Positions 26,294 to 47,691 of a stretch of 64,000 nucleotides of DNA are shown here, piece after piece. Origin of the DNA: Selaginella moellendorffii (Eukaryota > Plantae > Lycopodiophyta). The notes beneath the pieces are model-generated. The model was not told where the DNA came from. It searched no databases and saw only the letters and a list, made by a program, of their open reading frames with translations. Made by a program: the position numbers and the translations under genes. The stretch's first letter is position 1. The number at the start of each line of letters is the position of its first letter. The DNA lies in NCBI RefSeq assembly GCF_000143415.4, contig NW_003314316.1, forward strand, positions 1,262,666 to 1,326,665. Direction: 5' to 3'.

Positions 26294-28407
26294 ATGGCAG
26301 CAGCGACTTTGCTCGAGGCGATTCGAATCGCGGACAAGGTTGGCACAATATCCACTTCGAGCAAGGTCTGTAGAAACCAATGTAGGATCCTCATCGCGGC
26401 AGTCGGCTATGTCCGAGACTACCTCAGGCAAATCCAGGATCTCAACTTCGCGAGCAACGAGCCAGCCTTCGTGTGGGACGAAACCGTGGTTGTCCTTAAG
26501 AGAGGCATCCATCTCCTCAAGTCGTGCCAAGAAGGCAATTGGATTGCCCGGAGCCTGCTGTTCAAGGAAAGCTGCGATGAGTTCCAGAGCATTTATCCCG
26601 AGATCTTCAACTGCGTCGAGCTCGTCAGCGTCTATCTCTTTCAGCTGGCAGCGTCCACCTCGCACAGATCCAGGATTTCCCAGGCTTACAACTCGTGCCT
26701 CATGAGGCAGAACTCGAGCAGCATACTGGAAGAAGCCGGAAGGAACGATCAGAAGGAGCTCATGACTCTCGCAATGAGCCAAGAGCCGGGAAGCCTGACG
26801 ACCGAGAGCGAACGAGCCAAAGAGATACTCTGCTCCATGCTCCTGGGAAACAAGTCAGTGATTAACCACAAAGAACTCAAGCTGACAACACACCTGGGAC
26901 AAGGAGGTTTCGGAACCGTGTACGAAGCAATCTGGCTCGGTCACAAGTTTGCAGTGAAAGTCTTCCCTCAAGGTGACAAGAGCTTCGCCAAAGAGCTCGC
27001 GGTTCTTCAAGCGGACAAGCATCCCAACGTGTTGCACATCGCCAGCCAGTCTTTCGATGAAGAGAAGCAGCGGTACTCGCTGGTGATGGAGAAGATGGAC
27101 ATGGACCTGGAAAACTACGTCCTCAAGAAGAAGAAGTCTCTCCCGTTGCTGTCGATCATGGCAGTGATGCTCCAAGTTGCTACTGGCATGGCGTGGCTTC
27201 ACTCGAAGAATATAATCCACCGGGACCTCAAGCCGCAGAACATCTTGGTTGGCGAAGAAGACAACGATCTCGTGAGTATCAGGATTGCCGACTTTGGAGT
27301 CTCGAGGCCAAACTTCATCTCCTCCCAGATCGAAGCCGTTAGCATCCAAGGCACCAGGAACTTCATGGCACCGGAAGTGTGTAGCGGCGAGCGCTACACG
27401 AAAAAGGCCGACGTTTACAGCTACGGGATGTTGATTTACCAGCTTGTCACTGGAAACGTTCCGTTCGAGGACGGGATGGACATGGAGCAAGTCCTTCAAG
27501 GCGAGCGTCCTGAGATACCAGCCACCTGTCCGGAGTTCCTGTCGCAGCTCATGCGGGAATGCTGGAGCCACGATGCGAAAGAGAGGCCTTCCTTCTCGGA
27601 TATCTGCGAGCGGCTGAGGCAGCTCAAGACCAGGATCATCACTGGCATCGAGTCCATCGACGAGTTACGGGCCAAGTTGGTTGAAGTAGCCGGGTCGTCT
27701 TCTTCTTCTTCGTACTCGTCGTCTTCCTCATCCTTGTCGCACAGCAGGACTCGAGTGAACCTGGATTCTTTTGTCCAAGCGACTGAAGGGCTTTGGACCA
27801 AAAATCCTCCATCTCCCCTTGTACAGGTAAACTCTTTTGTTTTTAGTAACTTCCGGTGCTCATTGCGTTTAGTTTCAGCCGGTACCACACCGTCCTCAGC
27901 ACGTCGCACCAGTAGCAAAACCGGATAACAGGACCGAGCTCTTCGAAGTGGTGAAGAACGGCCTCGTCAAAAACGCCTTCGAGAAAGCTCTGTCCCTGAA
28001 CGATCCTTCCACGGTCTGGTGGCTTTGCACCAAGGTAATCCATTCACGTCCTCCAGCTGCTCATCAAAGCTTTGTCAGCTCAGGTGGAGCATACCGTCCT
28101 GCTCGTCTTCAGTGAATCAATGCTCATGGAACTGGCCGAGCAAATCAACACCAACTTCAAGGAAGACACTGCTCGCAGGTTGCTCTGGATCGACGAGATT
28201 GGCATCTTGCTGTTCAAGGACGTCAATGGACAGGCATGGTCATCACCTCGGATGCTGAGGATCCTGGAGCAGCTTTCACAGAACCTCCACGGCATGATGG
28301 CTATAACACCGCCAAAGAGCGAGCTGGGGATGAAGCTGGCGAACATGCTGGGCGGCACCAACGTGGGTCTCCAGGTTCGTATGAAGCTCTTCGTGTTATT
28401 CGTTTGA
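26294..28407 (+). CDS. MLKL/HeLo-like N-terminal domain - Ser/Thr kinase - EDC4/VARICOSE-C-like fusion protein, copy 1 (intact; exons 26294-27826, 27879-28034, 28084-28407; about 670 aa)
   Basis: Helical NTD (KVCRNQCRILIAAV...VLKRGIHLLKSCQEGNWIARSLLFKESCDEF). Kinase motifs GQGGFGTVY, FAVK, IIHRDLKPQNIL, IADFG, GTRNFMAPE and KADVYSYG. Ser-rich linker. Phase-0 GT-AG introns join DNRTELFEVVKNGLVKNAFEKALSLNDPSTVWWLCTK|VE...LMELAEQINTNFKEDTARRLLWI. Confidence 0.85.
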
Positions 28408-28664
28408 TTCAAATCGTTTGTCGTCGCAGCGTATCCGCGTTGCAGTTGACAACAAAGTTCAACACATGGGACTCCTCGGAGGATACTTTCCAGCGGAACA
28501 CCGGTAGTTTCGGAGTATTTCGATGTTCTAATTTCCTGCCTGCCAAAAGCATCAACCATGCTTCACGAAAGAACCATAAAGAACTTGCCAATTCCCGTTC
28601 TGAACTTTGAGTGAACGCCTATCATCGTTTCATCCTGCGACAAATATCCAAGAACAAAGCTCTC

Positions 28665-29257
28665 ACCATTCTTGAGTAGACGGTGAAGATCCCAACCTTT
28701 TCGATCTAGCAGCAGCAGTAGCAAGCAGCCTTGGCAGCTTCCGCAGCAGCGTAGACACCAGTAATTCTCGTCGCCACAGCATCGAGGATCATTGCTCTCC
28801 GCTCAAAGAACGACTTTGCCACTTTCAGCTTCTCGGATCCCCATAGGCTTGTAGACGATCCCGGCAGCTAGCCGCTGCTTCATGACCTTGGCTGGACGAA
28901 CGTAAGCATCGCCCAGCTTGGCCTTCAATCTCTTCAAGCGCTTTTGGGTACAGCAACCCACCTGAAAATCCGATCGTCCGCATGACCACCACCACCGCCT
29001 CCCGCTTTGTTGCGCTTGCCCGGATTCTTGGAGCCGGTGCTCTCGCCGTGCAAGGACGAGGAATTTGCTGGAGCCACACCAGCAAGCGCCTTGTCTTGCT
29101 CTTTGGTCCCTTCCTTCTCGGCGTGCTCGGACCAGAGATCACGCGATCCAATCGGGCCATAGGTGCGAACAATGCTGAGTACATCGGCAGATCCTTGGGT
29201 CTCTTCTTGGCGTAGAGGAAGGGATTGGAGATCGTGGATGTAGAGGCAAGAACACAA
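28665..29257 (-). pseudogene. Disrupted copy of a basic protein gene convergent with the kinase; weak resemblance to plant mitoribosomal mL80-type small proteins
   Basis: GC-rich coding-like DNA in shifting frames: LSIVRTYGPIGSRDLWSEHAEKEG..SKT RRLLVWL..., DRIFRWVAVP. Paralog at 47956-48504. Confidence 0.4.
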
Positions 29258-29319
29258 AAGGAACTAGAATCGAACTAGAATCGAGGCCATTTCTTATGGC
29301 TGATTAAAAGCCATTTCTT

Positions 29320-29504
29320 ATGGCTGATTAAAGTATAATTCCCACAAAAGAAAAGTCCACGGTAGACTTTTCCCACGCTGCAAAGCAATGGAGCGGCGCT
29401 ACTGGTGATCACCGACGAGCATGGCAGCAGCGACTTTGCTCGAGGCGATTCGAATCGCGGACAAGGTTGGCACAAGATCCACGAACACAAACTCGAGCAA
29501 GGTC
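29320..29504 (+). pseudogene. 5' fragment of the kinase fusion gene (upstream region + about 28 codons from ATG 29421), truncated at the duplication junction
   Basis: ATGGCAGCAGCGACTTTGCTCGAGGCGATTCGAATCGCGGACAAGG identical to 26294 onward, then an abrupt switch to VPS18 sequence. Confidence 0.85.
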
Positions 29505-29970
29505 ACCACTGCTGCTCCGGAGATTTGCTAGACAGTGCCTTCCACTGGGATCCAGGAAAACCTTACAAACGTATTGATCGGCTCCGCGGCTCAACGCCAA
29601 CTCTATCGGATCACGGGAGAAAAGCTCACAGTTTTCAGAAGAAACAAAGAAAGCGAGCGTGAATTTTTCTTTATTCTTTTGGAGACTCACCTGAGTTATC
29701 CCCGCCTCCAAATTCGTGATGAACAATCCAGCTGCTGCTAGTACTGACGAGCAGGACATTGTTTCCAGCGGCTACTGAGGTGACAAGCCCGTGACCTTTG
29801 GCGGCGTTTTGCTCCAGCACATCCAAGCTGAAGATCTTGCTCTCTGGCCTCGACAGTGAAATCGCCTGGAAATCCTGCGAGGAATTGGATCAGCGATCGA
29901 CGATTCAGCTCAATCTCACCTCGTTGAGCCCCGATTGAGCGGGCGAAGACGACGTCCATTCATCCAGCAT
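29505..29970 (-). pseudogene. Truncated duplicate of VPS18 5' exons
   Basis: Near-identical to 22338-22803, including introns and telo-box; ends in exon 3 after RHCLANLRSSSG. Confidence 0.9.
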
Positions 29971-31538: not shown

Positions 31539-34500
31539 TGTTAGGCGCCAACTTTGACCACGTGGTCAACGTTGGTCAAAGGGAGGCTTAAGGATATATT
31601 AAAGCATGTTAGGGTGAGGAACCTCAAGAGGTGGCGTAACATAGTCTAGGGTGATTAGATTTTTGTCTTTTTGTGCTGGATCATAACATTGGTATCAGAG
31701 AAGTTGGTTGCAATGGTCGACCAAGCTGAATGCTAGAATCCTATTGTCGATGGTGGTGCCGACGAAGCTGCAGAGATTTGGACCATTCAAGATGTGGTTC
31801 ACGAGCTGTGAGCCCTTAATTGAAATCAGCAAGAGATGCAAGATGAGATGCATGGCATGATGGATACCATGCGTGGGCGTGTTGAGGCACTCGAGGTTGG
31901 ACGGGGTAGCACTCCAAGTAAGCCTTCTTTGGTAGATCGACTCAAGATTCCAACCTTTTCTGGTGATGGTGGTGTGGACGAGTGTCTGGCTTGGCTAGCC
32001 AATGTGAATAAGTTCTTGGCTGCTAGGGGAACTCCAGATGTAGAGGCTTTAGTGGCTATTCCAATGGTTTTGCGTGATGTGGGTCTTCGATGGTGGAATT
32101 GGCTTGAGGAGTCTCGTGTTGCAGATAAGAAACCACCAGTGTCTACTATGGATGAGTTTGAGGTTGCTTTCCATTTACGTTTTGCCTCTCATTACAACAT
32201 GGAGAATGCTCGTACAGAACTTTAACATTTCCAGCAAGGGAAAATGACACTTGGGGACTATATTGAGAAGCTTACTTGCTTGATTAGTCATATTCCAACG
32301 AAGGATCCAGATCAAAACAAGTCTTACTTCATTGATGGCCTATATAGTGAGAACATGTGGCAACACTTGCATCATTTTCAGCCTACAAAGAGTTTGGAGG
32401 AGCTCTTTGATGGGGCTCGTCGACTTGACAATTACAAGCACAAGTCTTGCAAGCGTTCGTGGAGTCCTTCTATCGAGAATCATCGTGATGATCGCCATGG
32501 ACACGAGGATAGGAACAAGTATCACAAGTTGAAGTCAGTGGTGACTACTTCGGATGCAAAGGGGTCCAAGAAGCAGAAGTTCTTTGTGAAGAATTATAGA
32601 CAGGGTTGTCATCATTGCGGCGAACTTGGACACTACAAGGCTGATTGTCCACAGTTGAAGAACAAGCAATAGGACAAGAAGAATGCCCAATCTTCTTCTC
32701 ACCATAAGTTAGATACTAAAAAGTTACAAACTTTGCAGCGTGAGGATGACGAGAATGACCATTCCGGTTAGAGGAAGAGACTTTCGATTGTTGCTCATCA
32801 GCTCAACTGTGTGTGGAACAAGATGGAGCTCGAGGATATGCGTGAATCAGCTTTAATGCTGGAGGGCGTGTTCCATGGCGATCCAGTGTGAATTTTACTG
32901 GATAGTGGGAGCGATGACAACTTTGTTTCGGCAAAGTTTGTTGCGGAGCATGGCCTGGTCACATGTGGAGTTCTTCCATACGCAGTGGAAGGTGCAGCTA
33001 CCTCTGCTCAACATTTTGATGTTTGTGTCGAGGGGTTGGAAGTGTTGGTTGGCAAAATCACACTTGTGGAGACTTTTTATTTCGCGGATATCCATCGTGT
33101 GGATCTCATTCTTGGGATGCCATGGTTGGTGAAGGTGGATCCAGAGATAAAGTGGAGCATTAAGTGTATCTTGCTGAAGTATGGTGGCGTTAAAGATGTG
33201 TGGTTTGGCGAGGGCGTTCAACCATCAGTTGTTATACTCTCTACTACATCTTTGAAGCAGGTTTGTCATAATGAAAAGCACTTTCGAGTTACTTATTGTT
33301 TGTTCGTGACTTGGGGGCCTAAGGCACATGTGGGGAAGAAGCAGCAATATGGGACGTACTTGATGAGTTTTTTGATGTTTTTCCATTTGAACTTCCCCAT
33401 GGGTTGCCTCCGTTACAAGGTGTGGAGCATGGGATTACATTGGAGCCGGGGACGTGGCCAATTTACCGGCGTTCATTTCGGTTAAGTTATGCAGAGGAGC
33501 AAGAAGTTCAACAACAACTCAAGGAATTACTTGGGTTTGGATTTATTCAGCCAAGTAAGTCCCCGTTTGGTGCTCCGGTCTTGTTTGTGAAGAAGAAGGA
33601 CAATTCAATGCTAATGTGTATTAACTACCACGCTTTGAACAAGAAGACAATAAAGGATAAGATGCCAATGCCACGTGTGGATGATATCCTAGACAAGCTT
33701 GGTGAAGCACGAGTGTTTACCAAGATTAATCTGAGGAGTGGATATTATCAGATTGCAATGGATGATGCATCTATCTCCAAGACGGCATTCAACACAAACT
33801 TCGGACATTTTGAGTTTACAGTTATGCTGTTTGGTTTAATGAATGCACTGGCCACATTTACTCGATTGATGACGGAGGTATTTGGGCGTTATCTTCATGA
33901 GTTTGTGGAGATTTTCTTGGACAATACTCTTGTTTTAGCAAGAATATGGAGGAGCATAAGGTGCATTTGAGCAAGGTTCTTTTGTTACTCCGAGACAGCA
34001 AACTTTATACGAAGAAGAGCAAATATGAATTTGCAAAGTTGAAGGTGGAATATCTAGGCCATATTGTGACATCTAAGGGTGTCAAGACGGATCCAAGGAA
34101 GGTGGCTGTGGTGGAAAACTGGCCTACACCGACTACAGTGGCCGAGTTATGCAGTTTTCTTGGTATGGCTAGTTACTACCGACGTTTCCAGCATAAGTTT
34201 GCCAAGGTGGCTATTCCTTTAACGCGGTTGTTACGCAAGAATGTGCCATTCGAGTGGAAGCAGCCACAAGACGAGAGTTTTGTGTCGCTGAAACGATTGT
34301 TGAGCGAGACTCCAGTGCTTTGGATTGCTGATCCATCGAAACCTTACGAGGTGACATGCGATGTGAGTGGTTATGCACTGGGAGGAGTTCTCATGCAAGA
34401 AGGACAGCCTATTGCATATGAGAGTCGAACTTTGAATTTCGCGGAGCAATGTTATTCCACATATAAGCAAGAGTTACTCTCTATTGTTCATGCTTTGCGG

Positions 34501-36340
34501 ACGTGGCGGCACTATCTTTATGGTGCAGTGTTCGTGGTATTGACAAATCACAAACCAGTTGTGTATCTTTTCACACAGAAGGAGTTGAACACTAGGCAAG
34601 CTCGTTGGATGGTCAAACTCATAGAGTTTGGGAAGTTTCCTATTGAGCATCGTCCGGGAAAATCAAATGTGGTGGCTGATGCTTTATCTCTTGTTCGTCA
34701 TGTGACAACGTTACAAACATGATTTTGTCATCATTTGAGTAAAGTGGTCAGCGAGTTTGGGCAGTTGGTTGAGCATGCTCAGGCTCAGGATGCTAAGATG
34801 GCCTCTTTGTGAGACCAGATGGAAGCCCTTTTCTCCTTGGTGGATGGGATTCTCTACTACAATAGCTGTGTATATTTGCCACGGGTGGATGCATTACTTA
34901 CTCAAGTTTTATTTCACTATCATGATCGTCTAGAGGCCGGTCATTTTGGGGGGAAGAAGACATATGAGTTGATTAAGCGCAACTTTTATTGGAGGAATAT
35001 GAAGGCTGATATCCTCAAGTATTGTAAATCATGCGAGCTTTGTCAGCGGGTTAAGGTGCCATAGGAGAAGCCAGGGGACTTTTGCAACTTTTACCTATTC
35101 CTCAGAGCCATTGGTGTAGTTATCTCTATGGGTTGTTTGCCACGAACACAAAGGCAAAAGGAGCAAGTATGGGTCATAGTGGATCGGTTGACGAAGTATG
35201 TGTAGTTGTTGGCTCTTAGGAAGACTCACTGGCTCAAACTTGGCTGCGGTTTACTTGGAGAAGGTTTTTCTTGATTTTGGTTTGCCAGAGGACATCATTA
35301 GTGATTGAGATTCAAAGTTCACTAGTGGATTTTGGAAAAGCTTTGCAAAGGCTATGCGAGTGACTTTGAAACTCTCGAGTGGAGATCATCCTCAGACGGA
35401 TGGGCAAACCAAGTGTATGAATCAGGTGGTGGATATGCTACGTTGTAGCATTGGTCAAAGGCAAGGACAGTGGGATCCATATCTTCCGTTGGTGCAATTT
35501 GCTTACAACAATAGCCAACACAATGGAACCAAGCTAAATCCTTACTTTGCCATGTTTGGAAGGCATCCTTGAACAACAGTGGAGTTGGGATTGCATTTGA
35601 GTAAGGACGTTCAACTTAAGCTTGATTCCGAAGCGATTGATTTGGCCACAGAACTTGATGAGATTCTGGTGGTGTGCAAACAGAATTTGCAAGCAGCTCA
35701 GGATAGAGTAGAGAAGTTTGCCAATAAGCATCGCCAATTCTGGGAATATAAGGTCGATGATCTCGTCTTTGTGCGAGTGATCTTTCCGTCAAGTGAGCGG
35801 CAGAACACCTTGGTGCCTTTACGGACAGGGAAGAGTGATAAACTTTCTTATTGATATGCTGGTCCATATAAAGTGTTGGAGCACATTGGTAAAGCGGCTT
35901 ATCGGGTGTGGCTGCTAGCTAGGGTGAAAATTCATCTGGTATTTTATGTCAGCCAGTTGAAAGGTGTACTATCTCGGAGTGACAGGCCTAATGCCTCCTT
36001 GATGTATACGGCTGTGGAAGATGGCCCAAGAGCTTGAGTAGGGTTCCCTAGAAAGGGTGATCACCAGTCCTTGGGACAAGGACTTTGTTGGGGGGGAATT
36101 GTTAGGTGCCAACTTTGACCACATGGTCAACGTCGGTCAAAAGGAGGCTCAAGGATAAATTAAGGCATGTTAGGGTGAAGAACCTCAAGAGGTGGCATGC
36201 CAACTTTGACCACGTGGTCAACACCGGTTAAAGGGAGGCTCAAGGATATATTAAGGCATGTTAGGGTGAGGAACCTCAAGAGGTGGCATAGCATAGTCTA
36301 GGGTGACATGATCTCTGTCTTTTTGTACCGGATCATAACA
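31539..36340 (+). mobile_element. Ty3/Gypsy LTR retrotransposon (element G1), full-length but decayed
   Basis: TG...CA LTRs 31539-31688 and 36100-36340, TSD TAAAT, PBS tggtatcagag 31690, PPT ggggggaat. Gag (31836-32672, zinc knuckle CHHCGELGHYKADC), protease LLDSGSD, RT, RNase H and integrase with stops and frameshifts. Empty site at about 24200. Confidence 0.95.
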
Positions 36341-37225: not shown

Positions 37226-40200
37226 TGTAGCGCATGTGATCATGGGATGAGATTTGGATATACTGTCACCGTGAATCCTTGGAACCTTAGGGGATAAATA
37301 GGGATAAAATAGCCACTAAGGGCTCTCTTATCAAGCAATTGCCCCTTTTTCAGTTGGCTTAAGGGGAGAGAGATAAAGTGCACTATAGTTGGTATCGGAG
37401 CAAATGGCATGGGTTTGATTCCCATTGATTAGTGGCTACTTAAAAATATAATATACCCTTAAGTAAGGTATATTCCTACCCGTAAATTTGAAATCGTACG
37501 TATTAGGCATCCATGCGTACATCCTTCCTTTTGTGTGGAGTATCTACGGACGAAAGTATCCACTATGGGACTGCGGTACGGGTGTGTTAGGCGCCACCTT
37601 TGACTACGTGGTCAACGTCGGTCAAAGGGAGGCTCAAGGGTATATTAAGGCATGTTAGGGTAAGGGACTTAACCTACCCTAGGGCTCACAGTGGAGTGGC
37701 GGCGTAGTGGAGCTTTTGAGGTAGCTCGGGGGTGGTTGGTGGTGAGGAACCTCAAGAGGTGGCGTAGCATAGTCTAGGGCAACTAGATCTTTGTCTTTTT
37801 GCGCCGGATCATAACATTGGTATCAGAGGATTGGTTGTGATGGCCGACCAAGCTGAACGCTGGAATCCTATTGTCGATGGTGGTGCCGACGATGGTGCCG
37901 ACGAAACTGCAGAGATTTGGAGCATTCAAGATGTGGTTCATGAGCTGCGAGCCCTTAATCGAAATCAGCAAGAGATGCAAGACGAGATGCATGGCATGAT
38001 GGATACCATGCGTGGGCGTGTTGAGGCACTCGAGGCTGGACGGGGTAGCACTCCAAGTAAGCCTTCTTTGGTAGATCGACTCAAGATTCCAACCTTTTTC
38101 GGTGATGGTGGTGTGGACAAGTGTTTCGCTTGGCTAGCCAATGTGAAGAAGTTCTTGGCTGCTAGAGGAACTCTAAATGCAAAGGCTTTAGTGGCTATTC
38201 CAATGGTTTTGCGTGATGCGGGTCTTCGATGGTGGAATTGGCTTGAGGAGTCCCGTGTTGCAAATAAGAAACCACCAGTGTCTACCATGGATGAGTTTGA
38301 GGTTGCTTTTCATTTACGTTTTCCCCCTCATTACAACATGGAGAATGCTCGTATAGAACTTTGACATTTCCAGCAAGGGAAAATGACACTCGGGGACTAT
38401 ATTGAGAAGCTTACTTGCTTGATTAATTGTGTTCCAACGAAGGATCCAGATCAGAAAAAGTCCTACTTCATTGATGGCCTATATAGTGAGAACATGCGGT
38501 AACACTTGCATCATTTTCAGCCTACAAAGAGTTTGGAGGAGCTCTTTGATGCGGCTCGTCGACTTGACAATGACAAGCACAAGTCTCACAAGCGTTCGCG
38601 GAGTCCTTCTGTCGAGAATCATCGTAATGATCGCCGTGGACACAAGGATAAAATGCCGATGCCACGTGTGGATGATATCCTGGACAAGCTTGGTGAAGCA
38701 CAAGTGTTTACCAAGATTGATCTGAGGAGTGGATATCATCAGATTGCAATGGATGATGCATCTATCTCCAAGACAGCATTCAACACAAGTTTCGGACATT
38801 TTGAGTTTACAGTTATGCCGTTTGGCTTGACGAATGCACCAGCCACATTTACTCTGTTGATGACGGAGGTATTTGGGTGTTATCTTCATGAGTTTGTGGA
38901 GATTTTCTTGGACAATATTCTTGTTTTTAGCAAAAATATGGAGGAGCATAGGGTGCATTTGCGCAAGGTTCTTTTGTTACTTCGCGACAGCAAACTTTAT
39001 GCGAAGAAGAGCAAATGTGAATTTGCAAAGTCGAAGGTGGAATATCTAGGCCATATTGTGACATCTAAGAGTGTCAAGACGGATCCAAGGAAGATGGCTG
39101 TGGTGGAAAACTGGCCTACACTGACTACAGTGGCTGAGTTGCGCAGTTTTCTTGGTATGGCTAGTTACTACCGACGTTTCCAGCATAAGTTTGCAGAGGT
39201 GGCTATTCCTTTGACGCGGTTGTTACGCAAGAATGTGCCATTCGAGTGGAAGAAGCCACAAGACGAGAGTTTTGTGGCGCTGAAACGATTGTTGAGCGAG
39301 ACTCCAGTGCTTCGCATTGCTGATCCATCGAAACCTTACGAGGTGACATGCGATGCGAGTGGTTATGCACTGGGAGGAGTTCTCATGCAAGAGGGACAGC
39401 CTATTGCATATGAGAGTCGAACTTTGAATTTCGCGGAGCAACGCTATTCCACATATGAGCAAGAGTTACTCTCTATTGTTCATGTTTTGCGGACGTGGCT
39501 GCACTATCTTTATGGGGCAGTGTTCGTGGTGTTGACAGATCACAAACCAGTTGTGTATCTTTTCACACAGAAGGAGTTGAACACTAGGCAAGCTCGTTGG
39601 ATGGTCAAACTCATGGAGTTTGGGGAGTTTCCTATTGAGCATCGTCCGGGAAAATCAAATGTGGTGGCGGATGCTTTATCTCGTGTTCGTCATGTGACAA
39701 CATTATGAACACGATTTTATCATCATTTGAGTAAGGTGGTCAGCGAGTTTGGGCAATTGGTTGAGCATGCTCAGGCTCAGGATGCTGCGGTGGCCTCTTT
39801 GCGAGCCTAGATGGAAGCCCCTTTCTCATTGGTGGATGGGATTCTCTACTACAATGGCCGTGCATATTTGCCACAGGTGGATGCATTAATTACTCAAGTT
39901 TTATTCCACTATCATGATCGTCCAGAGGCCGGTCATTTTGGGGGGAAGAAGACGTATGAGTTGATTAAACGCAACTTTTATTGGAGGAATATAAAGGCTA
40001 ATATCCTCAAGTATTGTAAATCATGCGAGCTTTGTCAGTGGGTTAAGGTGCCACAGGAGAAGCCGGGGGGACTTTTGCAACCTTTACCTATTCCTCAGAG
40101 CCATTGGTGTAGTATCTCTATGGACTTCATCACTTGTTTGCCACGAACACAGAGGCAAAAGGAGCAAGTATGGGTAATAGTGGATCGGTTGACGAAGTAT

Positions 40201-41460
40201 GTGCGGTTGTTGGCTCTTCAGAAGACTGTCACTGCCTCAGACTTGGCTGCGGTTTACTTGGAGAAGGTTTTTCCTGATTTTGGTTTGCCGGAAGACATCA
40301 TTAGTGATCGAGATTCAAAGTTCACCAGTGAATTTTGGAAAAGCTTTGCAAAGGCTATGCAAGTGACTTTGAAACTCTCGAGTGGAGATCATCCTCAGAC
40401 GGATGGGCAAACTGAGCGTGTGAATCAGGTGGTGGAGGATATGCTACATTGTAGCATTGGTCAAAGGCAAGGACAGTGGGATCTATATCTTCCATTAGTG
40501 CAATTTTCTTACAACAATAGCCAACACAGTGGAACCAAGCTAAATCCTTACTTTGCCATGTTTGGAAGGCATCTTCGAACAACGGTGGAGTTGGGATTGC
40601 ATTTGAGTAAGGACGTTCAACTTAAGCTTGATTCCGAGGCAACTGATCTGGCCACAGAACTTGATGAGATTCTGGTGGTGTGCAAACGGAATTTACAAGT
40701 AGCTCAGGACAGAGCGGAGAAGTTTGCCAATGAGCATTGCCAATTCCAGGAATATAAGGTGGGTGATCTCGTTTTTGTGCGAGTGATCTTTTCGTCAAGT
40801 GAGCGACAGAACACCTTGGTGCCTTTACGGACAGGGAAAAGTGATAAACTCTCCCATCGATATGCTGGTCCATATGAAGTGCTGGAGCGCATTGGTAAAG
40901 CGGCTTATCAGGTGTGGCTGCCAACTAGGGTGAAAATTCATCCGGTATTTTATGTCAGCCAGTTGAAAAGTGTACTATCTCATAGTGACGGGCATAATGC
41001 CTCCTTGATGTATACAGCTGTGGAAGATGGACCAGGAGCTTGAGCAGGATTCCCCAGAAAGGGTGATCAGCGGTACAACTTGTCCTTGGGACAAGGACGT
41101 TGTTGGGGGGGAAGAATTGTTAGGCGCCAGCTTTGACTACGTGGTCAACTTCGGTCAAAAGGAGGCTCAAGGGTATATTAAGGCATGTTAGGGTAAGGGA
41201 TTTAACCTACCCTAGGGCTCACAGTGGAGCGGCGGTGCAGTGGAGCTTTTGAGGTAGCTCGGGGGTGGTTGGGTAGTGAGGAATCTCAAGAGGTGGCATA
41301 GGGCAACTAGATCTTTGTCTTTTTGCGCCGGATCATAACAGGGTGGATGATTAATTACTTCACATGGAATAATTGGTTTACACAATGGAAGGATTGGTAA
41401 ATTCAGTGCGGAAATGGAGGTGCTGGTTCCCCTTGGCTCAGTAGGGGTTGTAGTCAATAG
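37226..41460 (+). mobile_element. Truncated LTR-element remnant (LTR + iMet PBS + leader), split by Gypsy G2
   Basis: Starts tgtag at 37226, PBS tggtatcggagc 37390-37401, resumes after the G2 TSD at 41346. Absent from duplication unit A. Confidence 0.6.
37585..41340 (+). mobile_element. Ty3/Gypsy LTR retrotransposon (element G2, same family as G1) with internal deletion of zinc knuckle/protease/RT N-terminus
   Basis: LTRs 37585-37816 and 41118-41340, TSD GGGTG, PBS 37818. Gag 37831-38364, RT/RNase H 38506-39708 (FLDNIL), integrase 39811-41043 (H-H-C-C, SMDFIT, HPQTDGQTER). Confidence 0.95.

Positions 41461-42204: not shown

Positions 42205-42239
<35 letters not shown>
42189..42239. repeat. 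Compound (AC)n(AT)n microsatellite
   Basis: acacacac...atatatat run. Confidence 0.9.
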
Positions 42240-42240
<1 letters not shown>

Positions 42241-43270
42241 GAGTTATTACCCAACACCATCACAAGCCATCTCCACTCTTGATGCAAACTTATTTTGGAA
42301 TAATATCAAAACAAAAAAAAATTGAATTCCACTTTGAAAGAAGAATTGAGGAAATAATTATAAAGATGTGCTTCCTCAAAGGAAATTATCAAATTCGTTA
42401 AGGGAATTATCAGATCCAAGTGACATAGTAGTGAGTATCCACAGCAAAAAGTTCAATATCAATACCAGTCAACACTTTACATGTGATATGTGTCATAACA
42501 CCTTTTCTCACCCTACCTCCCATTGGCTGAGAGTGTAAGACGTGGTTAACAAAATAACCCTTTGACAATTACCCCCCATTGGACGGCAGGATGGCTGCCA
42601 TAGGCTGGATCCAGTGGCCCAGAAAATTTGGCAACTCTTTATTTTTATAAATTTCCTATAGATTTGGCATCAACTCATATAACATTGACAGCTTGTTGCT
42701 TGGACGACAATTATTAGTTGGGAAATGGTACAATCCTCAAGGTGTCTTCAGATACAAAAACGAAGATCCTTTATATTTCCAAAGGCCTACCAGATTCAGT
42801 CCGACTGCACTTGCGTCCTGTTTCTCCAGGATGACAAGAACGGGATAACTGGAGGTGAGTGCTGATCCATTTCCAGTCTCTCATGTGAGCCTCCCACTAC
42901 TGTCATCAAGGGCCTGAAACATACACGAATTTTCTTGTCTGATTAAAGTATGATTCCCATGCCTTAGGGCGGGGTTCCATGCTCCACCCTGGGGGGAAAA
43001 TTTCCAGGGGGGGGAAATAAAACCCTGGGTTCCATGCCCCCCCTGGTGACATGGCACCAAAAATGGGGGGGAAGGGGGGAACCCGGTGTCCCCTCCGTAA
43101 ATTTCTCCCAGAGCCTGGAACCCGGTAAAATACACAAATAAAATAATGCCATGTGGCTAAATTGCCACATCATCTAAAAATTTGGCCTGCCCTAATTTTG
43201 TGAGCATGCGAGTTCTTGGAGGGTTTTGGGGGGGATTTTTGCAGTGATTTGAGAAGGAAGTTTGTAAAAA

Positions 43271-44078
43271 ATGGAGAATTGCTCACCCTCACCTCATCCA
43301 TGGTTGCAATTTGGCTCTTATTCTAGTTCATCAATAGCTCAAACTCATGTAAGTATGAAATTTTGTAATTCTAGAATTTTGCTTATTTTTCTTAATGTCC
43401 AGGGAGGAGAGGGCTCTTCTTTTAGTGCTAGCATGGGATCTATGCCAAATGCAGCTATGATCCAGGTACTTTTCATTTTCTCTTTGGTTTTTTTCTTTTG
43501 TTTAATAATGGTTTTTAGCCTGGCATTCCTACATTCAACCCGATAATTGGATTTGTTCCAAGTATCCCTACAATGCAAGCTAACTTCAATTCATCGAGCC
43601 AGGTATTTTTTTCCAATTGTTTTCCTACTTTGTGTTGAATGCATTTTTGCAATAGCAAGGATTTCATGGTGGGGGAATTGGAAATTCCTCTTTCACAACT
43701 TTATTATCACTACCTCCTCCAGGAACTAGCTCTTTTGATGGAGCAACAAGTATTCCAGAGGTACAATAAATATTATTTATGTTTATTTTTTGATTTCACA
43801 ACTTGTTTTCCCAGAATGAACCAACTTTGAATGATGAACAAAAAGGAAAATGGTCTACTGATGAAAATATGGCTCTTCAATATGCAAAGAGGATGGAAAA
43901 AGAGAAGGATCGAGAAGGCGGTGGCCGTAGAAAATCGATGAAAGGACCAGAGAAGTGGCAACACATTTCCGGCATCTTACGTTCACAGGGATTTCATCAC
44001 ACACAAATGCAATGTGAGTCACAATGGGATGAGCTTGTGGATGACCGGTATAAGAACCCTAGCCTGCATCATGGTTAA
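43271..44078 (+). CDS. Harbinger Myb/SANT (trihelix-like) DNA-binding protein, spliced, probably decayed
   Basis: Last exon KWSTDENMALQYAK...EKWQHISGILRSQGFHHTQMQCESQWDEL shows Trp spacing of Myb/SANT. Upstream exon structure is uncertain. Confidence 0.65.
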
Positions 44079-45309
44079 ATTTGTCGGGGTCAAAATCTTC
44101 CATGAACCTATCATTCCGTGTGATCATTAAGTTATGTAGCACACAATAAGCCATGATGTTATTTGCAAGGATGCCTGGATGACCTCCGAATCCTTTTCGA
44201 GCTAGCAATTTCCATTGCCTCTTTAAAATTCCAAAAGATCACTTGACAACAATCCTCGTAGAAGAATGAAGGAAGTTGTACTGCTCTTTGCTATGAAACC
44301 TGTTTGGATATGAGACCAACACCGGTAAAGCACAGTAATATCCTCCATCTGCAATGATATATTGTGGAATGTCCCCAAACTCTGTGTGGTATACTGGACC
44401 ACATAAACGCTTCTTCTCAATCCAAGCCTTCTTCAAACCACTAGAATTCCAAACTCGTCTATCTGGAACACTACCTGCTATCCCTATTGTTATGTCAAGG
44501 AATGAAGTCTTACTGTCTACCACGGCTTGAACTACCATCGAGTAGTACTTTTTTGCCCCAGCATACCAATCCGTTGCATCCTCTGATCCTGGGAGCTCGA
44601 TTGCAATGTGAGTGCAATCCATTGCACCACAACAATTTGGAAATCCACGCAATCTCTGAAATCCAGTTATAACTTCTTTCATTCCCTCCTCATCCGGCCA
44701 ATGGATCATTAGTCCTTCATGCTCAAGCAATGCATACCTGAAACGGCATAGACAAGCTTGGGCAATGCATGAAGCCACTCCAAATGCATCACCAATTGTT
44801 CGCCACATATCCCCGGATGCCAAACGTTTCAAAGCAATAGCTACTTGCTTTGAAATAGGCAAGTGCCGCCTTGGTATTTCTGCCAAACCTGGAGGAGGCC
44901 TCCTAACCAATTTTGGAGCAAGCTCATCACAAAGAAAAGTGAATATAGATACCGAAACCCGAAAAACTTCTCTGAATCTTTGTGGATCTATATGAAGAAC
45001 CTCAAGTTCTGTTTGATACCACCAGTGTAGACTTCTCGGCTTGATGTAGTACACACTGATTGATAGCCCTAGGAGCTCCTTTTTAGTGATCACTCTCTCA
45101 ACAAATGAAGATGTAGCAGGACATGGCATAGAAAGAACTATAGCAATCGCTTCCTCCACCATTCGAATGAACAAGAGTTTTCTTAAAACCAGAACTAAAA
45201 TCATATCTTCCTCCTCCAGAAAGAACAACTCTACCAAATTTAAGTACCTCATCACAATCCCTACAGCATGGGAAATGATCGCCAAGGAAAAATCAGTGAG
45301 CCGTGGCAT
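44059..45309 (-). pseudogene. Harbinger (HARBI1-like) DDE transposase with premature stop
   Basis: FREVFRVS...QVAIALKRLASG...GFPNCCGAMDCTHI...GSVPDRRVW...IIADGGY...YNFLHSSTRIVVK*SFGILKRQW. The consensus VERAFG is mutated to K + TGA; the frame continues to CVLHN and a TAG at 44061-44059. Confidence 0.85.
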
Positions 45310-45594
45310 GGTGTGTGCTCAATTTAGGGTAAACAAAATTGGCACCCTAATCCTTTATGACGTGGCAAAAAAAACGCTGATGTGTAAACTTACGTGGCAT
45401 ATAAAGAAGAGGGTTACATGTAACCATTAAAAAAATGGGGAGGGGAGTTTTTTTTGGAGGGGGGGAGAAATTTCCAGGTGGGTGGAGCATGGAACCCTGC
45501 CCTTAGGACTTAGAATTATTCAAAAAGAAAAGTCCACGGTAGACTTTTCCCACGCTATACCTTTTACAAGAATGGTGCGGCGCTGGTAACGGGC

Positions 45595-47691
45595 ATGGCA
45601 GCAGCGACTTTGCTCAAGGCGATTCGAATTGCGGACAAGGTTGGCACAATATCCACTTCCAGCAAGGTCTGTAGAAACCAACGTAGGATCCTCATTGCGG
45701 CGGTCGGCTATGTCCGAGACTACCTCAAGCAAATCCAGGATCTCAACTTCGCGAGCAACGGGCCAGCCTTCGTGTGGGACGAAACCGTGGCTGTCCTTAA
45801 CAGAGGCCTCCATCTCCTCAAGTCGTGCCAAGAAGGCAATTGGATCGCGCGGAGCCTGCTGTTCAAGGAAAGCTGCGATGAGTTCCAGAGCATTTATCCC
45901 GAGATCTACAACTGTGTCGAGCTCGTCAGCGTCTATCTCCTTCAGCTGGCACCGTCCACCTCGCACAGATCCAGGATTACCGAGGCTTACAACTCGTGCC
46001 TCATGAGGCAGAACTCGAGCAGCATGCTGGAAGAAGCCGAAAGGAACGATCGGAAGGAGCTCATGACTCTCGCAATGAGCCACGAGCCCGGGAAGCCTGA
46101 CGACCGAGAGCGAAACAGCCAAAGAGATACTTTGCTCCATGCTCCTGGGAAACAAGTCAGTGATTAACCACAAGGAACTCAAGCTGACAACACACCTGGG
46201 ACAAGGAGGTTTCGGAACCGTGTATGAAGCAATCTGGCTCGGTCACAAGTTTGCAGTGAAAGTCTTCCCTCAAGGTGACAAGAGCTTCGCCAAAGAGCTC
46301 GCGGTTCTCGAAGCGGACAAGCATCCCAACGTGTTGCACATCGCCGGCCAGTCTTTAGATGAAGAGAAGCAGCGGTACTCGCTGGTGATGGAGAAGATGG
46401 ACATGGACCTGGCAAACTACGTCCTCAAGAAGAAGAAATCTCTCCCGTTGCTGTCGATCGTGGCAGTGATGCTCCAAGTTGCTACTGGCATGACGTGGCT
46501 TCACTCGAAGAATATAATCCACCGGGACCTCAAGCCGCAGAACATCTTGGTTGGCGAAGAAGACAACGATCTCGTGAGTATCAGGATTGCCGACTTTGGA
46601 GTCTCGAGGCCCGATTTCATCTCCTCCCTCATCAGCAAAGCCACCGCCAAGCAAGGCACCAGAAACTTCATGGCACCAGAAGTGTGGACCAGCGAGCGCT
46701 ACACGAAGAAGGCCGACGTTTACAGCTACGGGATGCTGAGCTACCAGCTTGTCACTGGAAACATTCCGTTCAAGGTCGGGATGGACATGGAGCAAGTCCT
46801 TCGAGGCGAGCGTCCTGAGATACCAGCCACCTGTCCAGAGTTCCTGTCGCAGCTCATGCGGGAATGCTGGAGCCACGATGCAAAAGAGAGGCCTTCCTTC
46901 TCGGATATCTGCGAGCGGCTGAAGCAGCTCAAGACCAGGATCATCACTGGCACTGACTCCATCGATGAGTTACGAGCCAAGTTGGTTGCAGCAGCCAGGT
47001 CATCTTCCTCTTCTTCGTACTCGTCGTCTTCCTCATCCTCGTCGCACATCATGAACCTGGATTCTCCTGTCCAAGCACCTGAAGGGCTTTGGACCCAAAA
47101 TCCTCCATCTCCCGTTGTCCAGGTAAACTCTTTTGCTTTATGTAACTTCTGGAGCTCACCACCTTTGGTTTCAGCCGGTACCACACCGTCCTCACCAAGT
47201 CGCACCACCAGATCAAAGGACCGAGCCCTTCGAACTGGTAAAGTACAGCCTCTTCATAAACGCCTTCGAGAAAGCTCTGTCCCTGAACGATCCTTCCACG
47301 GTCTGGTGGCTTTGCACCAAGGTAATCCATTCACGTCCTCCAGCTGCTCATCAAAGCTTTGTCAGCTCAGGTGGAGCAAAGCGTCGTGCTCCTCTTCAGT
47401 GACTCAATGCTCATGGAAGTGGCCGAGCAAATCAACACCAACTTCAAGGAAGACACTGCTCGCAGGTTGCTCTGGTTCGCCGAGATCCTGTTCATCTTGC
47501 TGTACGTCAACGTCAATGGACAGACATCACCTCGGATGCAGAGGATCTTGGAGGAGCTTTCACAGAACCTCCACGGCATGATGGCTATAACACCGTCAAA
47601 GAGCGAGCTGGGGATGGAGCTGGCGAACGTGCTGAAAAGAACCAACGTGGGTCTTCGGGTTCGTATGAAGCTCTTCGTGTTATTCGTTTGA
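45595..47691 (+). pseudogene. HeLo-like/kinase/EDC4-C fusion gene, copy 2 (+1 frameshift at about 46087-46089 between NTD and kinase; exons end 47122, 47175-47321, 47371-47691)
   Basis: gagCCCgggaag versus gagCCgggaag in the other copies. NTD ORF 45595-46167, kinase ORF from 46139, splice sites intact. Confidence 0.85.

What the first reader, a model, noticed from the sequence alone, without database searches (positions are those of the whole stretch)
27879..47691. Diversifying-selection signature concentrated in the EDC4-like domain between paralogs
Seen: hand alignment of exon 3 (28084-28407 vs 47371-47691) gives about 21 amino-acid-changing codons and two in-frame indels against only about 3 synonymous changes. 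The adjacent 49-nt intron (28035-28083 vs 47322-47370) is identical. Exon 2 is similarly variable (TELFEVVKNGLVKN vs TEPFELVKYSLFIN), while the AFEKALSLNDPSTVWWLCTK core is invariant. The kinase core is clearly more conserved. Inference: positive selection on surface residues, as expected for a ligand- or effector-sensing integrated domain rather than neutral decay.
Basis: partly seen in the sequence, partly recalled or inferred. Interest (0 to 1): 0.8.

Follow-up and report, generated by a model that had tools for sequence, protein, structure and literature searches.

The report
Fast-changing tail domain in spikemoss kinases
In a repeated spikemoss gene that joins a cell-death-type helical bundle, a kinase and a borrowed piece of the mRNA-decapping scaffold EDC4, the borrowed piece changes its amino acids far faster than the rest of the gene and than its own introns. 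This looks like selection for diversity at about a fifth of its positions, but it is tangled with copying between repeats and is not proven.

Summary
The window is Selaginella moellendorffii. It holds three copies of a tandem gene: an MLKL-like four-helix bundle, an intact-looking kinase and an EDC4/Ge-1 C-terminal domain. The scan had already noted this architecture here and on another piece of this genome.

**Observation: confirmed, with one correction.**
- Copy 1 and copy 2 differ in exon 3 by 22 residues and two in-frame indels.
- That is about 28 nonsynonymous against about 4 synonymous differences.
- Introns 2 and 3 are identical.

**Selection tests on 12 copies from two haplotype scaffolds:**
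- Domain-wide dN/dS in exon 3 is about 1 (0.94 over all copies, 1.5 in the clade with the shared introns). It is not significantly above 1. The kinase gives 0.47 and the N-terminus 0.41.
- A site class with omega about 6-7, covering about 18-21% of codons, is strongly supported within that clade (LRT 25-30).
- That support survives separate segment trees, a recombination-aware bootstrap, removal of the indel loop, and use of intact copies only.
- It vanishes with plain site models over all 12 copies on segment trees (p=0.2).
- The kinase control gives a weaker signal.

**Other points:**
- Gene conversion is demonstrated, and copy 2 is a mosaic.
- Pseudogenisation of copy 2 explains at most 7 of the 25 differences.

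The parts
26294..27826 (+). Copy 1 (W1), exon 1. It encodes the MLKL-like four-helix bundle and brace (aa 1-190), a kinase with intact G-loop, VAVK, HRD, DFG and APE motifs (aa 195-441), and a Ser-rich linker.
   Evidence: ORF. 100% identical to NCBI protein P0001. Pfam Pkinase 1e-52. The N-terminal model's best PDB matches are AtMLKL3 (6KA4) and human MLKL NTD (2MSV).
27827..27878 (+). Copy 1, intron 1 (52 nt, GT..AG). It differs from copy 2's intron 1 at 10 of 52 positions.
   Evidence: Copy 2's intron 1 is identical to that of the other lineage (G3p, G5).
27879..28034 (+). Copy 1, exon 2. It holds the end of the linker and helices 1-3 of the EDC4_C-like domain. The 3' 62 nt are identical to copy 2.
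28035..28083 (+). Copy 1, intron 2 (49 nt). It is identical in W1, W2, W3, G2 and G6.
   Evidence: The spliced joint is seen in RNA-type contigs on the copy-2 counterpart.
28084..28374 (+). Copy 1, exon 3 (97 codons), helices 4-8 of the EDC4_C-like domain. This is the hypervariable exon. Candidate selected codons are 3, 8, 36, 37, 40, 44-45, 50, 52, 77, 87, 88, 90, 91 and 94 of this exon.
28375..28429 (+). Copy 1, intron 3 (55 nt, phase 0). It is identical in W1, W2, G1, G2 and G8.
28430..28507 (+). Copy 1, exon 4 (25 codons plus TAG), a tail beyond the EDC4 homology. Copy 2 has a different version of it.
45595..47122 (+). Copy 2 (W2), exon 1. An extra C in the run 46087-46089 shifts the frame, with a stop at 46165-46167. 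The kinase part groups with the other lineage (W4/G5/G7).
   Evidence: A DNA run covers the site and reports no indel.
47175..47321 (+). Copy 2, exon 2 (49 codons, with a 9-nt deletion). The 5' part is of the other lineage's type and the 3' part is identical to copy 1, so a recombination breakpoint lies inside this exon.
47322..47370 (+). Copy 2, intron 2 (49 nt), identical to copy 1.
47371..47658 (+). Copy 2, exon 3 (96 codons, open frame), of 'type B'. This type is shared with the intact copy G1 and with G2.
   Evidence: RNA-type contigs match with 0-1 mismatches.
47659..47713 (+). Copy 2, intron 3 (55 nt), identical to copy 1.
47714..47764 (+). Copy 2, exon 4 (16 codons plus TGA).
   Evidence: same tail as P0010.
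62448..64000 (+). Copy 3 (W3, matching P0004). The window end cuts it inside intron 1. The rest was read from L001 10001-12200.
61798..62244 (+). A 447-nt relic of exon 1 (gene positions 435-884) just upstream of copy 3. The same relic sits upstream of G2 on the other scaffold.

Best explanation
**The locus.** The stretch is part of a polymorphic tandem array in Selaginella moellendorffii, evolving by birth and death.
- At least 5 copies lie on this scaffold and 8 on the syntenic second haplotype scaffold. About half of them are broken.
- Each gene encodes an MLKL-like four-helix bundle, an active-looking kinase and a C-terminal Ge-1/EDC4-type helical domain.
- Copies exchange sequence by gene conversion or unequal crossing-over, so every copy is a mosaic.

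**What happens in exon 3.**
- One clade of eight copies has nearly identical introns 2 and 3.
- Within that clade, exon 3 (helices 4-8 of the EDC4-like domain) has accumulated amino-acid replacements at about a fifth of its codons. Many of these codons carry 3-5 different residues. The rate is several times the synonymous rate.
- The hydrophobic core and the reading frame are kept.
- The change is episodic and lies mostly on the lineages leading to exon types B and C. Copy 1 keeps an ancestral-like type A.

**Most likely cause (inferred, not shown).** Diversifying selection on a binding surface made of the second half of helix 6, the loop after it, and the polar face of the last helix. Meanwhile the flanks are homogenised.

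**Function (inferred by analogy).** The domain is a recognition module, either for pathogen proteins that target the decapping scaffold or for the scaffold's own partners. Binding would then be read out by the kinase and the MLKL-like executioner domain.
For: **Identity and architecture:**

**Array and haplotypes:**

**Mosaicism:**
- AU tests reject each partition's tree on the other partitions (all p<0.05, down to p=1e-46).
- Copy 2's intron 1 and the 5' part of its exon 2 are of the other lineage's type. G8's intron 2 is a hybrid.

**Exon versus flanks in the eight-copy clade:**
- Mean pairwise distance is 0.100 in exon 3, against 0.026 and 0.025 in introns 2 and 3.
- Tree-free minimal changes per site are 0.30 nonsynonymous, 0.23 synonymous and 0.08 in introns 2+3. 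Nonsynonymous versus introns gives p=2e-6.

**Codon models** (my own GY94-F3x4 code, whose likelihoods equal IQ-TREE's):
- M2a vs M1a in the clade: LRT 30.5, omega2 7.4, 21% of sites.
- Three separate segment trees: LRT 12.8, p=0.0016.
- Bootstrap under M1a with recombination: 0 of 103 replicates reach 29.9, and the maximum is 13.2.
- Without the indel loop: LRT 26.3. With the four intact copies only: LRT 20.2.
- Branch-site style test on all 12 copies, with the foreground defined by intron type: LRT 25.0, omega2 6.2, 18% of sites.

**Constraint is still present:**
- omega0 is about 0.03-0.13 for about 35-42% of sites.
- Background lineages have omega 0.48.
- Exon-3 indels of 3, 6, 15 and 3 nt are all in frame, whereas intron indels are 1, 5, 6, 11 and 12 nt.

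**Not an effect of pseudogenes:** 18 of 25 W1/W2 differences are shared with the intact G1.

**Surface:** in the last helix the variable residues lie 177 degrees from the hydrophobic moment (permutation p=0.039).

**Plausibility of the target:**
- CaMV TAV binds the final C-terminal helix of VARICOSE (PMC6504953).
- A rust effector associates with EDC4 (PMC4749346).
- Wheat Pm13 is a resistance gene made of an MLKL N-terminal domain and an active kinase (PMC10951266).
Against: - Domain-wide omega is not significantly above 1 in any set (0.94, 1.52 and 1.16).
- Site models over all 12 copies are only p=0.009 on one tree and p=0.20 on segment trees.
- With six intact copies from both lineages, p=0.12.
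- The clade, and the foreground, were chosen after seeing the data.
- The same tests give LRT 6-10 in the kinase. So recombination or model misfit inflates them, or selection is not confined to this domain.
- Exon-3 synonymous sites are also more diverged than the flanking introns (p=0.005). This fits intron homogenisation, with the exon merely older.
- Several variable codons differ by 2-3 adjacent bases. Single-step codon models over-count such changes.
- Variable sites are not enriched at positions that are variable or polar in EDC4 proteins.
- Variability in helix 6 is not periodic.
- I had no model coordinates, so I did no true surface mapping.
- There is no functional or population data. 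Expression evidence rests on short contigs of runs whose RNA status is a guess.
Confidence: 0.55

Rival explanations
1. Relaxed constraint plus divergence-limited gene conversion, with no positive selection. The borrowed EDC4-like domain is only loosely constrained in a redundant, decaying array. Exon 3 drifted apart, helped by multi-nucleotide mutations. Once it had diverged and carried indels, it blocked heteroduplex formation. Conversion then kept homogenising only the conserved flanks (the 3' part of exon 2 and introns 2 and 3). That makes the exon look accelerated.
For: - Domain-wide omega is about 1.
- About half of the copies are broken.
- Even the kinase and N-terminus have high omega (0.41-0.6).
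- Conversion is demonstrated.
- Exon-3 synonymous sites are also more diverged than the flanking introns.
- All-copy site models on segment trees are not significant.
- The kinase control also scores.
- Variable sites are random with respect to EDC4-family conservation.
Against: - A class with omega of about 6-7 is favoured over omega at or below 1, with LRT 20-30, in the clade, in intact copies only, and in the branch-site style test.
- That support exceeds every one of 103 recombination-aware null simulations.
- Six codons carry 4-5 different residues among eight copies whose synonymous change is only 0.23 per site.
- The core is conserved and all indels are in frame.
- Background lineages show omega 0.48, so the domain is constrained where it is not diversifying.
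Confidence: 0.3
2. Selection is real, but the partner is endogenous. The Ge-1-type domain dimerises with VARICOSE, or binds decapping factors. The paralogs have then diverged to bind different endogenous partners or to avoid cross-dimerisation (subfunctionalisation), and are not sensing pathogen molecules.
For: [quoted passage not shown]
- The fold and the motifs W-L-C, LSQ and W are kept.
- The acceleration is episodic and lineage-specific.
Against: - Copy-number and type polymorphism between haplotypes, many pseudogenes, transposon-rich spacing and multi-state hypervariable codons are more typical of arms-race loci.
- The last helix has lost the conserved EDC4 pattern (RLVIHVVNSLL-like).
Confidence: 0.15
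3. Artefact. In this two-haplotype Sanger assembly, mis-joined reads from 90-95% identical copies created chimeric copies. The pattern of identical introns and divergent exon, and the 'recombination', would then be assembly products.
For: - An earlier follow-up on another piece of this genome judged one copy there to be an assembly patchwork.
- The NCBI models P0002 and P0009 fuse neighbouring copies.
- Public contigs laid on copy 2 are too short to test linkage.
Against: - The window has no N runs.
- Each exon-3 type with its flanking introns recurs in two to four independently assembled copies on two scaffolds.
- RNA-type contigs carry type-B exon 3 with 0-1 mismatches, and the exon2-exon3 and exon3-exon4 joints.
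- A 2024 DNA run covers copy 2, including the frameshift site, at 97% identity or more.
Confidence: 0.05

Closest known systems
Kinase fusion proteins and MLKL-type resistance proteins of cereals (e.g. wheat Pm13, MLKL_NTD + active kinase; WTK4 with an HMA-like integrated domain)
   Same: - An N-terminal MLKL-like four-helix bundle followed by a kinase with all catalytic motifs (Pm13 in PMC10951266).
- An extra, non-kinase domain fused to a kinase, as in integrated-domain tandem kinases (PMC13478195, listed).
- A clustered, polymorphic locus.
   Different: - The extra domain is an EDC4/Ge-1 C-terminal domain. I found this in no described kinase fusion.
- In the 1.8-billion-protein library it is fused to a kinase only in this Selaginella cluster.
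- The host is a lycophyte, not a cereal.
- No resistance phenotype, effector or cell-death activity is known.
EDC4 / Ge-1 / VARICOSE C-terminal domain (Pfam PF21289; PDB 2VXG, 4Q2S)
   Same: - The sequence profile match passes the curated cutoff (28-34 bits).
- 31-40% identity to the last ~120 residues of 1,100-1,800-aa EDC4 proteins.
- The eight-helix model's best PDB match is 2VXG, TM 0.75.
- W, C, S and W of the WLC / LSQ / W motifs are invariant.
   Different: - It is detached from the WD40 scaffold and fused behind a kinase.
- It has a five-residue deletion after helix 4.
- The conserved last-helix pattern of EDC4 is replaced by hypervariable, often charged residues.
- An extra exon-4 tail is present.
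Exon-faster-than-intron evolution in multigene families (MHC peptide-binding exons with homogenised introns; snake-venom PLA2 isozymes). Recalled from general knowledge, not checked in papers here.
   Same: - Flanking introns are nearly identical among copies, while the exon between them differs mostly by replacements.
- Gene conversion is at work.
- Multi-state hypervariable codons sit beside an invariant core.
   Different: - Here the domain-wide omega is only about 1-1.5.
- Synonymous sites are also elevated.
- The ligand is unknown, and half of the copies are pseudogenes.
Arabidopsis MLKLs (AtMLKL1-3; PDB 6KA4, 6LBA)
   Same: The best structural match of the N-terminal 195 residues is AtMLKL3 (Foldseek probability 1.0, TMq 0.61). 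The domain order of helical bundle, brace and kinase fold is the same.
   Different: - AtMLKLs are described as pseudokinases (statement in PMC10951266). Here the G-loop, Lys, HRD, DFG and APE motifs are intact.
- Pfam MLKL_N is not matched directly. There is only a weak DUF7792 hit, and MLKL_N is matched in the nearest outside relatives.
- The C-terminal domain is different.

Membership tests
EDC4_C / Ge-1 C-terminal domain (PF21289) | Profile match above Pfam's gathering score | tested here: met
   Scores are 28.1, 27.9, 33.9 and 31.0 bits against a cutoff of 27. One paralog (P0008) scores 26.2, just below it. Single exons alone score below the cutoff.
EDC4_C / Ge-1 C-terminal domain (PF21289) | Sequence homology to the C-termini of bona fide EDC4/VCS proteins (Ge1_WD40 + EDC4_C) | tested here: met
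   phmmer against 1.8 billion proteins gives E=1.7e-11 to 1e-4, matching the last ~120 residues of 1,100-1,800-aa proteins. Two of these were confirmed as Ge1_WD40 + EDC4_C.
EDC4_C / Ge-1 C-terminal domain (PF21289) | All-helical Ge-1 C-terminal fold | tested here: met
   The AF2 model has pLDDT 87.6 and eight helices. The Foldseek top matches are 2VXG (TMt 0.75) and 4Q2S (0.71), at weak E-values of 0.006-0.02.
EDC4 / VARICOSE protein (the decapping scaffold itself) | N-terminal WD40 propeller and a long Ser-rich middle region | tested here: not met
   The protein has an MLKL-like bundle and a kinase instead. It is a fusion carrying only the terminal domain.
Plant MLKL family | N-terminal four-helix-bundle (HeLo/MLKL_N) executioner domain plus brace | tested here: inconclusive
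   The fold's best matches are AtMLKL3 6KA4 and human MLKL 2MSV, at probability 1.0 but E=0.05-0.13. There is no direct Pfam MLKL_N hit (DUF7792 at 0.003). The nearest outside relatives carry MLKL_N. NCBI names P0001 'mixed lineage kinase domain-like'.
Plant MLKL family | Pseudokinase domain (as in AtMLKLs and animal MLKL) | tested here: not met
   GQGGFG, VAVK, HRDLKPQN, DFG and APE are all present. In this respect it resembles wheat Pm13.
Kinase fusion proteins with an integrated domain (plant resistance proteins) | A kinase fused to a domain otherwise found in an unrelated host protein | tested here: met
   Kinase plus EDC4_C.
Kinase fusion proteins with an integrated domain (plant resistance proteins) | Confers pathogen recognition or resistance; the integrated domain binds an effector | not testable with these tools
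   There is only literature plausibility that EDC4/VCS is a pathogen target.
Genes under diversifying (positive) selection | Domain-wide dN/dS significantly above 1 | tested here: not met
   Exon 3 gives omega 0.94 over 12 copies, 1.52 over the 8-copy clade and 1.16 over 4 intact copies. None differs from 1. Tree-free counts give 1.05 and 1.65, the latter with p=0.046.
Genes under diversifying (positive) selection | A class of codons with dN/dS significantly above 1, robust to recombination | tested here: inconclusive
   Met in the intron-defined clade (LRT 30.5; 12.8 on segment trees; bootstrap p<0.01; intact copies only, 20.2) and in the branch-site style test (25.0). Not met for all 12 copies on segment trees (p=0.20). 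The kinase control gives LRT 6-10.
Genes under diversifying (positive) selection | Selected sites are exposed and clustered | tested here: inconclusive
   In the last helix the variable face is opposite the hydrophobic face (p=0.039). Helix 6 is not significant. There is no association with EDC4-family variability or polarity.

The most novel reading that the evidence does not exclude
The array encodes a lycophyte class of intracellular immune receptor. An MLKL-like executioner domain and an active kinase carry an integrated copy of the last domain of the decapping scaffold EDC4/VARICOSE as bait. The hypervariable polar face of its final helix would then be the surface that catches pathogen proteins aimed at the decapping complex. 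This is the helix that a plant virus protein is reported to bind in VARICOSE. If so, integrated-decoy kinase receptors, and P-body targeting by pathogens, would predate seed plants.
Probability: 0.2. Interest if true: 0.8.

Novelty: new variant of a known kind. Interest (0 to 1): 0.55.

Why it matters
Kinase fusion proteins and MLKL-type proteins have only recently emerged as plant resistance genes, and almost all known cases are from cereals. Three features here resemble resistance-gene loci:
- a tandem, haplotype-polymorphic array in a lycophyte;
- a fused domain whose donor protein (EDC4/VARICOSE) is a documented target of viral and fungal proteins;
- hypervariable codons on a conserved scaffold within that domain.

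If the selection signal holds, it gives a concrete and testable case. There are defined exon-3 types and about 11-15 candidate contact residues. These can be used to ask whether integrated-bait receptors and surveillance of the decapping machinery are ancient in land plants.

If it does not hold, the locus is still a clean example of how gene conversion among paralogs can mimic accelerated exon evolution.

Tried and rejected
1. **Pair-only dN/dS (W1 vs W2).** Omega is 2.0 but p=0.11, so I did not treat it as evidence by itself.
2. **IQ-TREE codon runs.** The report file does not print omega. I wrote my own GY94-F3x4 likelihood code and checked that its lnL equals IQ-TREE's for five partitions.
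3. **Full optimisation of three segment trees jointly.** This timed out. I replaced it with per-segment M0 branch lengths plus one scale factor each.
4. **'Relaxation after copy 2 was pseudogenised'.** Rejected as the main cause: only 4 of 25 differences are private to copy 2 and 3 more are shared only with G2.
5. **'Introns are conserved because they are constrained'.** Rejected. Between the two lineages, introns 2 and 3 differ by 27% and 15%, about as much as or more than exon 3.
6. **Sequence search of the C-terminal part against PDB chains.** No hit. The fold search was needed.
7. **Mapping sites on the 3-D model.** The tool returns no coordinates, so I used only secondary structure, helical moments and EDC4-family conservation.
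8. **Public reads.** Only short Logan contigs were available, and their RNA status is a guess. They confirm the two splice joints and the presence of type-B exon 3. They cannot assign expression to copy 2 or verify long-range linkage.
9. **Literature search for this architecture.** It found nothing specific.
10. **Joined exons.** Window exons were searched one by one by reference. Whole-protein work used the database protein P0001, which one search returned as identical.

Full report
**What the stretch is.**
- The window is from Selaginella moellendorffii, scaffold GL377620.1.
- The exon-1 translation of copy 1 is 100% identical to the NCBI protein P0001 (685 aa, 'mixed lineage kinase domain-like protein').
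- A self-comparison finds three copies of one gene on the + strand. W1 is at 26294-28507 and W2 at 45595-47764. W3 starts at 62448 and is cut by the window end. A 447-nt exon-1 relic lies at 61798-62244.
- Between the copies lie Ty3, Harbinger and Copia elements. Upstream are a PPR gene, a subtilase gene and, by synteny, a Vps18 gene.
Exons were searched one by one by reference, and whole-protein work used P0001.

**Gene model.**
- P0001 and its paralogs (alignment A1) give four exons for W1: 26294-27826, 27879-28034, 28084-28374 and 28430-28507. The introns are 52, 49 and 55 nt, all GT..AG.
- Contigs of two runs that look like RNA show joints that remove exactly 49 and 55 nt at the W2 counterparts.
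- W2 carries an extra C in the run 46087-46089. This shifts the frame of exon 1 and leads to a stop at 46165-46167. A 2024 DNA run covers the site and reports no indel.

**Protein architecture.**
- The kinase domain scores 1e-52 and has every catalytic motif.
- The C-terminal 180 residues pass Pfam's EDC4_C cutoff in four of five tests.
- They match the extreme C-termini of 1,100-1,800-aa EDC4/VARICOSE-type proteins at up to E=1.7e-11.
- They fold (pLDDT 87.6) into eight helices whose best PDB matches are the Ge-1 C-terminal region 2VXG and the Pdc1 Ge1 domain 4Q2S.
- The N-terminal 195 residues fold into a helical bundle whose best matches are AtMLKL3 and the human MLKL N-terminal domain.
- The nearest relatives outside Selaginella carry Pfam MLKL_N.
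- In a library of 1.8 billion representative proteins, the EDC4_C-like tail is joined to a kinase only in this Selaginella cluster.

**The observation.**
- It holds. Introns 2 and 3 are identical between W1 and W2.
- Exon 3 differs at 22 residues plus two in-frame indels, with 27.8 nonsynonymous and 4.2 synonymous differences (omega 2.0).
- Exon 2 differs by 10 nonsynonymous and 2 synonymous changes plus a 9-nt deletion. Its 3' 62 nt are invariant.
- The kinase has omega 0.45.
- For the single pair, omega above 1 is not significant (p=0.11).

**More copies.**
- Using exact-protein look-ups, I fetched the rest of this scaffold and about 58 kb of scaffold GL377616.1.
- Together they hold 12 alignable copies: W1-W4 and G1-G8.
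- The two scaffolds are syntenic. The upstream flank is 98.3% identical, and blocks inside the array are 96.6-99.8% identical.
- They are therefore most likely the two haplotypes of one locus, with different copy content.
- W2, G2, G5 and G6 have frameshifts or stops in exon 1. G3p and G4p are partial, and G3p has a stop in exon 3. W1, W3, W4, G1, G7 and G8 are open.

**Mosaic history.**
- Trees for the N-terminus, the kinase, the linker-to-exon-2 segment and the intron2-exon3-intron3 segment conflict. AU tests reject each tree on the other partitions (all p<0.05, down to p=1e-46).
- W2 is a visible chimera. Its kinase groups with the W4/G5/G7 lineage (95% support).
- Its intron 1 is identical to that lineage's, and the 5' half of its exon 2 is of that type. 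From the 3' half of exon 2 onward it belongs with W1.
- G8's intron 2 is a hybrid of the two intron types.

**Exon versus intron.**
- Eight copies (W1, W2, W3, G1, G2, G4p, G6, G8) share near-identical introns 2 and 3. Intron 2 is identical in five of them, and intron 3 in five.
- The other four copies have clearly different introns (27% and 15% divergence).
- Within the eight, mean pairwise distance is 0.100 in exon 3, 0.026 and 0.025 in the two flanking introns, 0.032 in the kinase and 0.087 in intron 1.
- Tree-free minimal changes per site are 0.30 (nonsynonymous), 0.23 (synonymous) and 0.08 (introns 2+3).
- Nonsynonymous exceeds the introns (p=2e-6), but synonymous does too (p=0.005).
- The identical introns are therefore not a clean neutral yardstick. 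They are either young or homogenised, and the exon as a whole is more diverged.

**Codon models.** My GY94-F3x4 code reproduces IQ-TREE's likelihoods.
- One-ratio omega over the 12 copies is 0.94 for exon 3, 1.02 for exon 2 and 0.84 for the linker.
- It is 0.47 for the kinase and 0.41 for the N-terminus. The last two are significantly below 1.
- So the would-refute condition 'dN/dS not above 1 with more paralogs' is met at the level of the whole domain.
- Site models tell a different story:

| Data set and test | Result |
|---|---|
| All 12 copies, one tree, M2a vs M1a | LRT 9.4, p=0.009 |
| All 12 copies, three segments with their own trees | p=0.20 |
| Eight-copy clade, one tree | LRT 30.5; omega2 7.4; 21% of codons |
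| Eight-copy clade, segment trees | LRT 12.8, p=0.0016 |
| Eight-copy clade, without the indel-rich loop | LRT 26.3 |
| The four intact copies of the clade only | LRT 20.2 |
| M1a null on three different segment trees, analysed on one tree (103 replicates) | maximum LRT 13.2, against 29.9 observed |
| Branch-site style test, all 12 copies, foreground = the intron-defined clade | LRT 25.0; omega2 6.2; 18% of codons |

- A two-ratio model puts omega at 2.2 on the lineages of exon types B and C, against 0.48 elsewhere (p=0.028 for omega above 1; post hoc).
- Controls with the same tests give LRT 6-10 for the kinase, 3-5 for the N-terminus and about 0-1.6 for the linker and exon 2.
- The signal is therefore strongest, but not unique, in exon 3. 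Some inflation from recombination or model misfit is likely.

**What varies.**
- The candidate codons, in exon-3 numbering of W1, are 3, 8, 36, 37, 40, 44, 45, 50, 52, 77, 87, 88, 90, 91 and 94.
- Six alignment columns carry four or five different residues among the eight copies.
- W1's type matches the other lineage at most of these sites, so it is ancestral-like. The changes lie on the branches to types B (W2, G1, G2) and C (W3, G4p).
- 18 of the 25 W1/W2 differences are shared with the intact G1, and only four are private to W2.
- All exon-3 indels (3, 6, 15 and 3 nt) are in frame, unlike those in the introns.
- About 35-40% of codons are under strong constraint.
- On the model, the sites fall in short helix 4, the second half of helix 6, the loop after it and the last helix.
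- In the last helix, the variable residues form a stripe 177 degrees from the hydrophobic stripe (p=0.039). In helix 6 there is no significant periodicity.
- Variable sites do not coincide with variable or polar positions of EDC4 proteins. Several replace the conserved last-helix pattern of EDC4.

**Reading.**
- The most economical account is an array evolving by birth and death with frequent conversion. In it, part of the EDC4-like domain has undergone episodic, site-restricted acceleration of amino-acid change while its core stayed constrained. I give this about 0.55.
- The main rival is relaxed constraint with conversion that stops at the diverged exon. It explains the intron/exon contrast and the domain-wide omega of about 1. 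It does not explain the multi-state codons or the size of the site-class signal. I give it about 0.3.
- That the domain senses pathogen molecules is an analogy only.
  - Kinase fusions and an MLKL-type protein are resistance genes in wheat.
  - A rust effector associates with EDC4.
  - CaMV TAV binds the final C-terminal helix of VARICOSE.
- An endogenous partner (VCS dimerisation, DCP2) is an equally testable alternative.

**Earlier notes of the scan.** The architecture had been noted on this window (s1-337339, s1-328929). It had also been followed up on another piece of the genome (s1-431093), with a warning about assembly patchworks. I checked for N runs (none in the window) and for recurrence of each type in several copies. 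Long-range linkage could not be verified with the short public contigs.

Noticed in passing
window 16417-22872 vs L003 1-6459; L001 11157-17064 vs L004 1-5979; L001 19823-22170 vs L004 8194-10541: Scaffolds GL377620.1 and GL377616.1 are syntenic (98.3%, 96.6% and 99.8% identity). They look like two haplotypes of one array with different copy number and spacing. The copies at the same position after the flank (W1 and G1) are only about 91% identical and carry different exon-3 types.
   Followed up: partly
window 61798-62244; L003 11978-12407: A 430-450-nt relic of exon 1 (gene positions about 435-890) sits just upstream of copy W3. The same relic lies between G1 and G2 on the other scaffold, so it is a shared scar of an old partial duplication.
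   Followed up: no
L004 24599-26828 (copy G8), intron 2: The 55-nt intron 2 of G8 is a hybrid. Its first 37 nt are of the 49-nt type and its end is of the 54-nt type of the other lineage. It also has a TAG rather than CAG acceptor. This marks a conversion or crossover breakpoint inside an intron.
   Followed up: partly
window 47818-47959: Contigs of two RNA-type runs skip 140 nt in the 3' region of copy 2, with non-canonical ends (TC..CA). This is probably a paralog or allele lacking that segment rather than an intron.
   Followed up: no
window 26864-27628 (kinase domain) and its paralogs: The kinase domain itself gives a modest positive-selection signal (site-model LRT 6-9; branch-site style LRT 10, with about 9% of codons at omega of about 5). 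This is either an artefact of recombination or real change at a few kinase sites.
   Followed up: partly
L003 12677-15922 (P0002, 804 aa); L001 10001-15672 (683-aa product): Some NCBI gene models run across two neighbouring copies (G2+G3p; W3 to W4). Annotated protein lengths and isoforms at this locus are therefore unreliable.
   Followed up: no
window 31613-36180 vs 37585-41341; ORFs 38506-39708 and 39811-41043: Two copies, about 92% identical, of a Ty3-type retrotransposon segment (RT-RNaseH and integrase) lie in tandem between W1 and W2. The region 32-42 kb has a strong positive GC skew.
   Followed up: partly
window 44239-45309 (-) and 48766-49857 (+): A PIF/Harbinger-type transposase ORF (DDE_Tnp_4) lies just upstream of copy 2. 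A Copia-type gag ORF lies just downstream of it.
   Followed up: partly
window 28430-28507 vs 47714-47764: Exon 4 exists in at least three versions among the copies (25, 16 and about 20 codons). They differ by indels and many substitutions. This tail lies beyond the EDC4 homology and is predicted with low confidence.
   Followed up: no
window 29346-29482: A 137-nt copy of the region around the gene's start (82% identical to window 26199-26355, which spans the last 95 nt of the 5' flank and the first 62 nt of exon 1) lies 0.8 kb downstream of copy 1, without a gene behind it.
   Followed up: no
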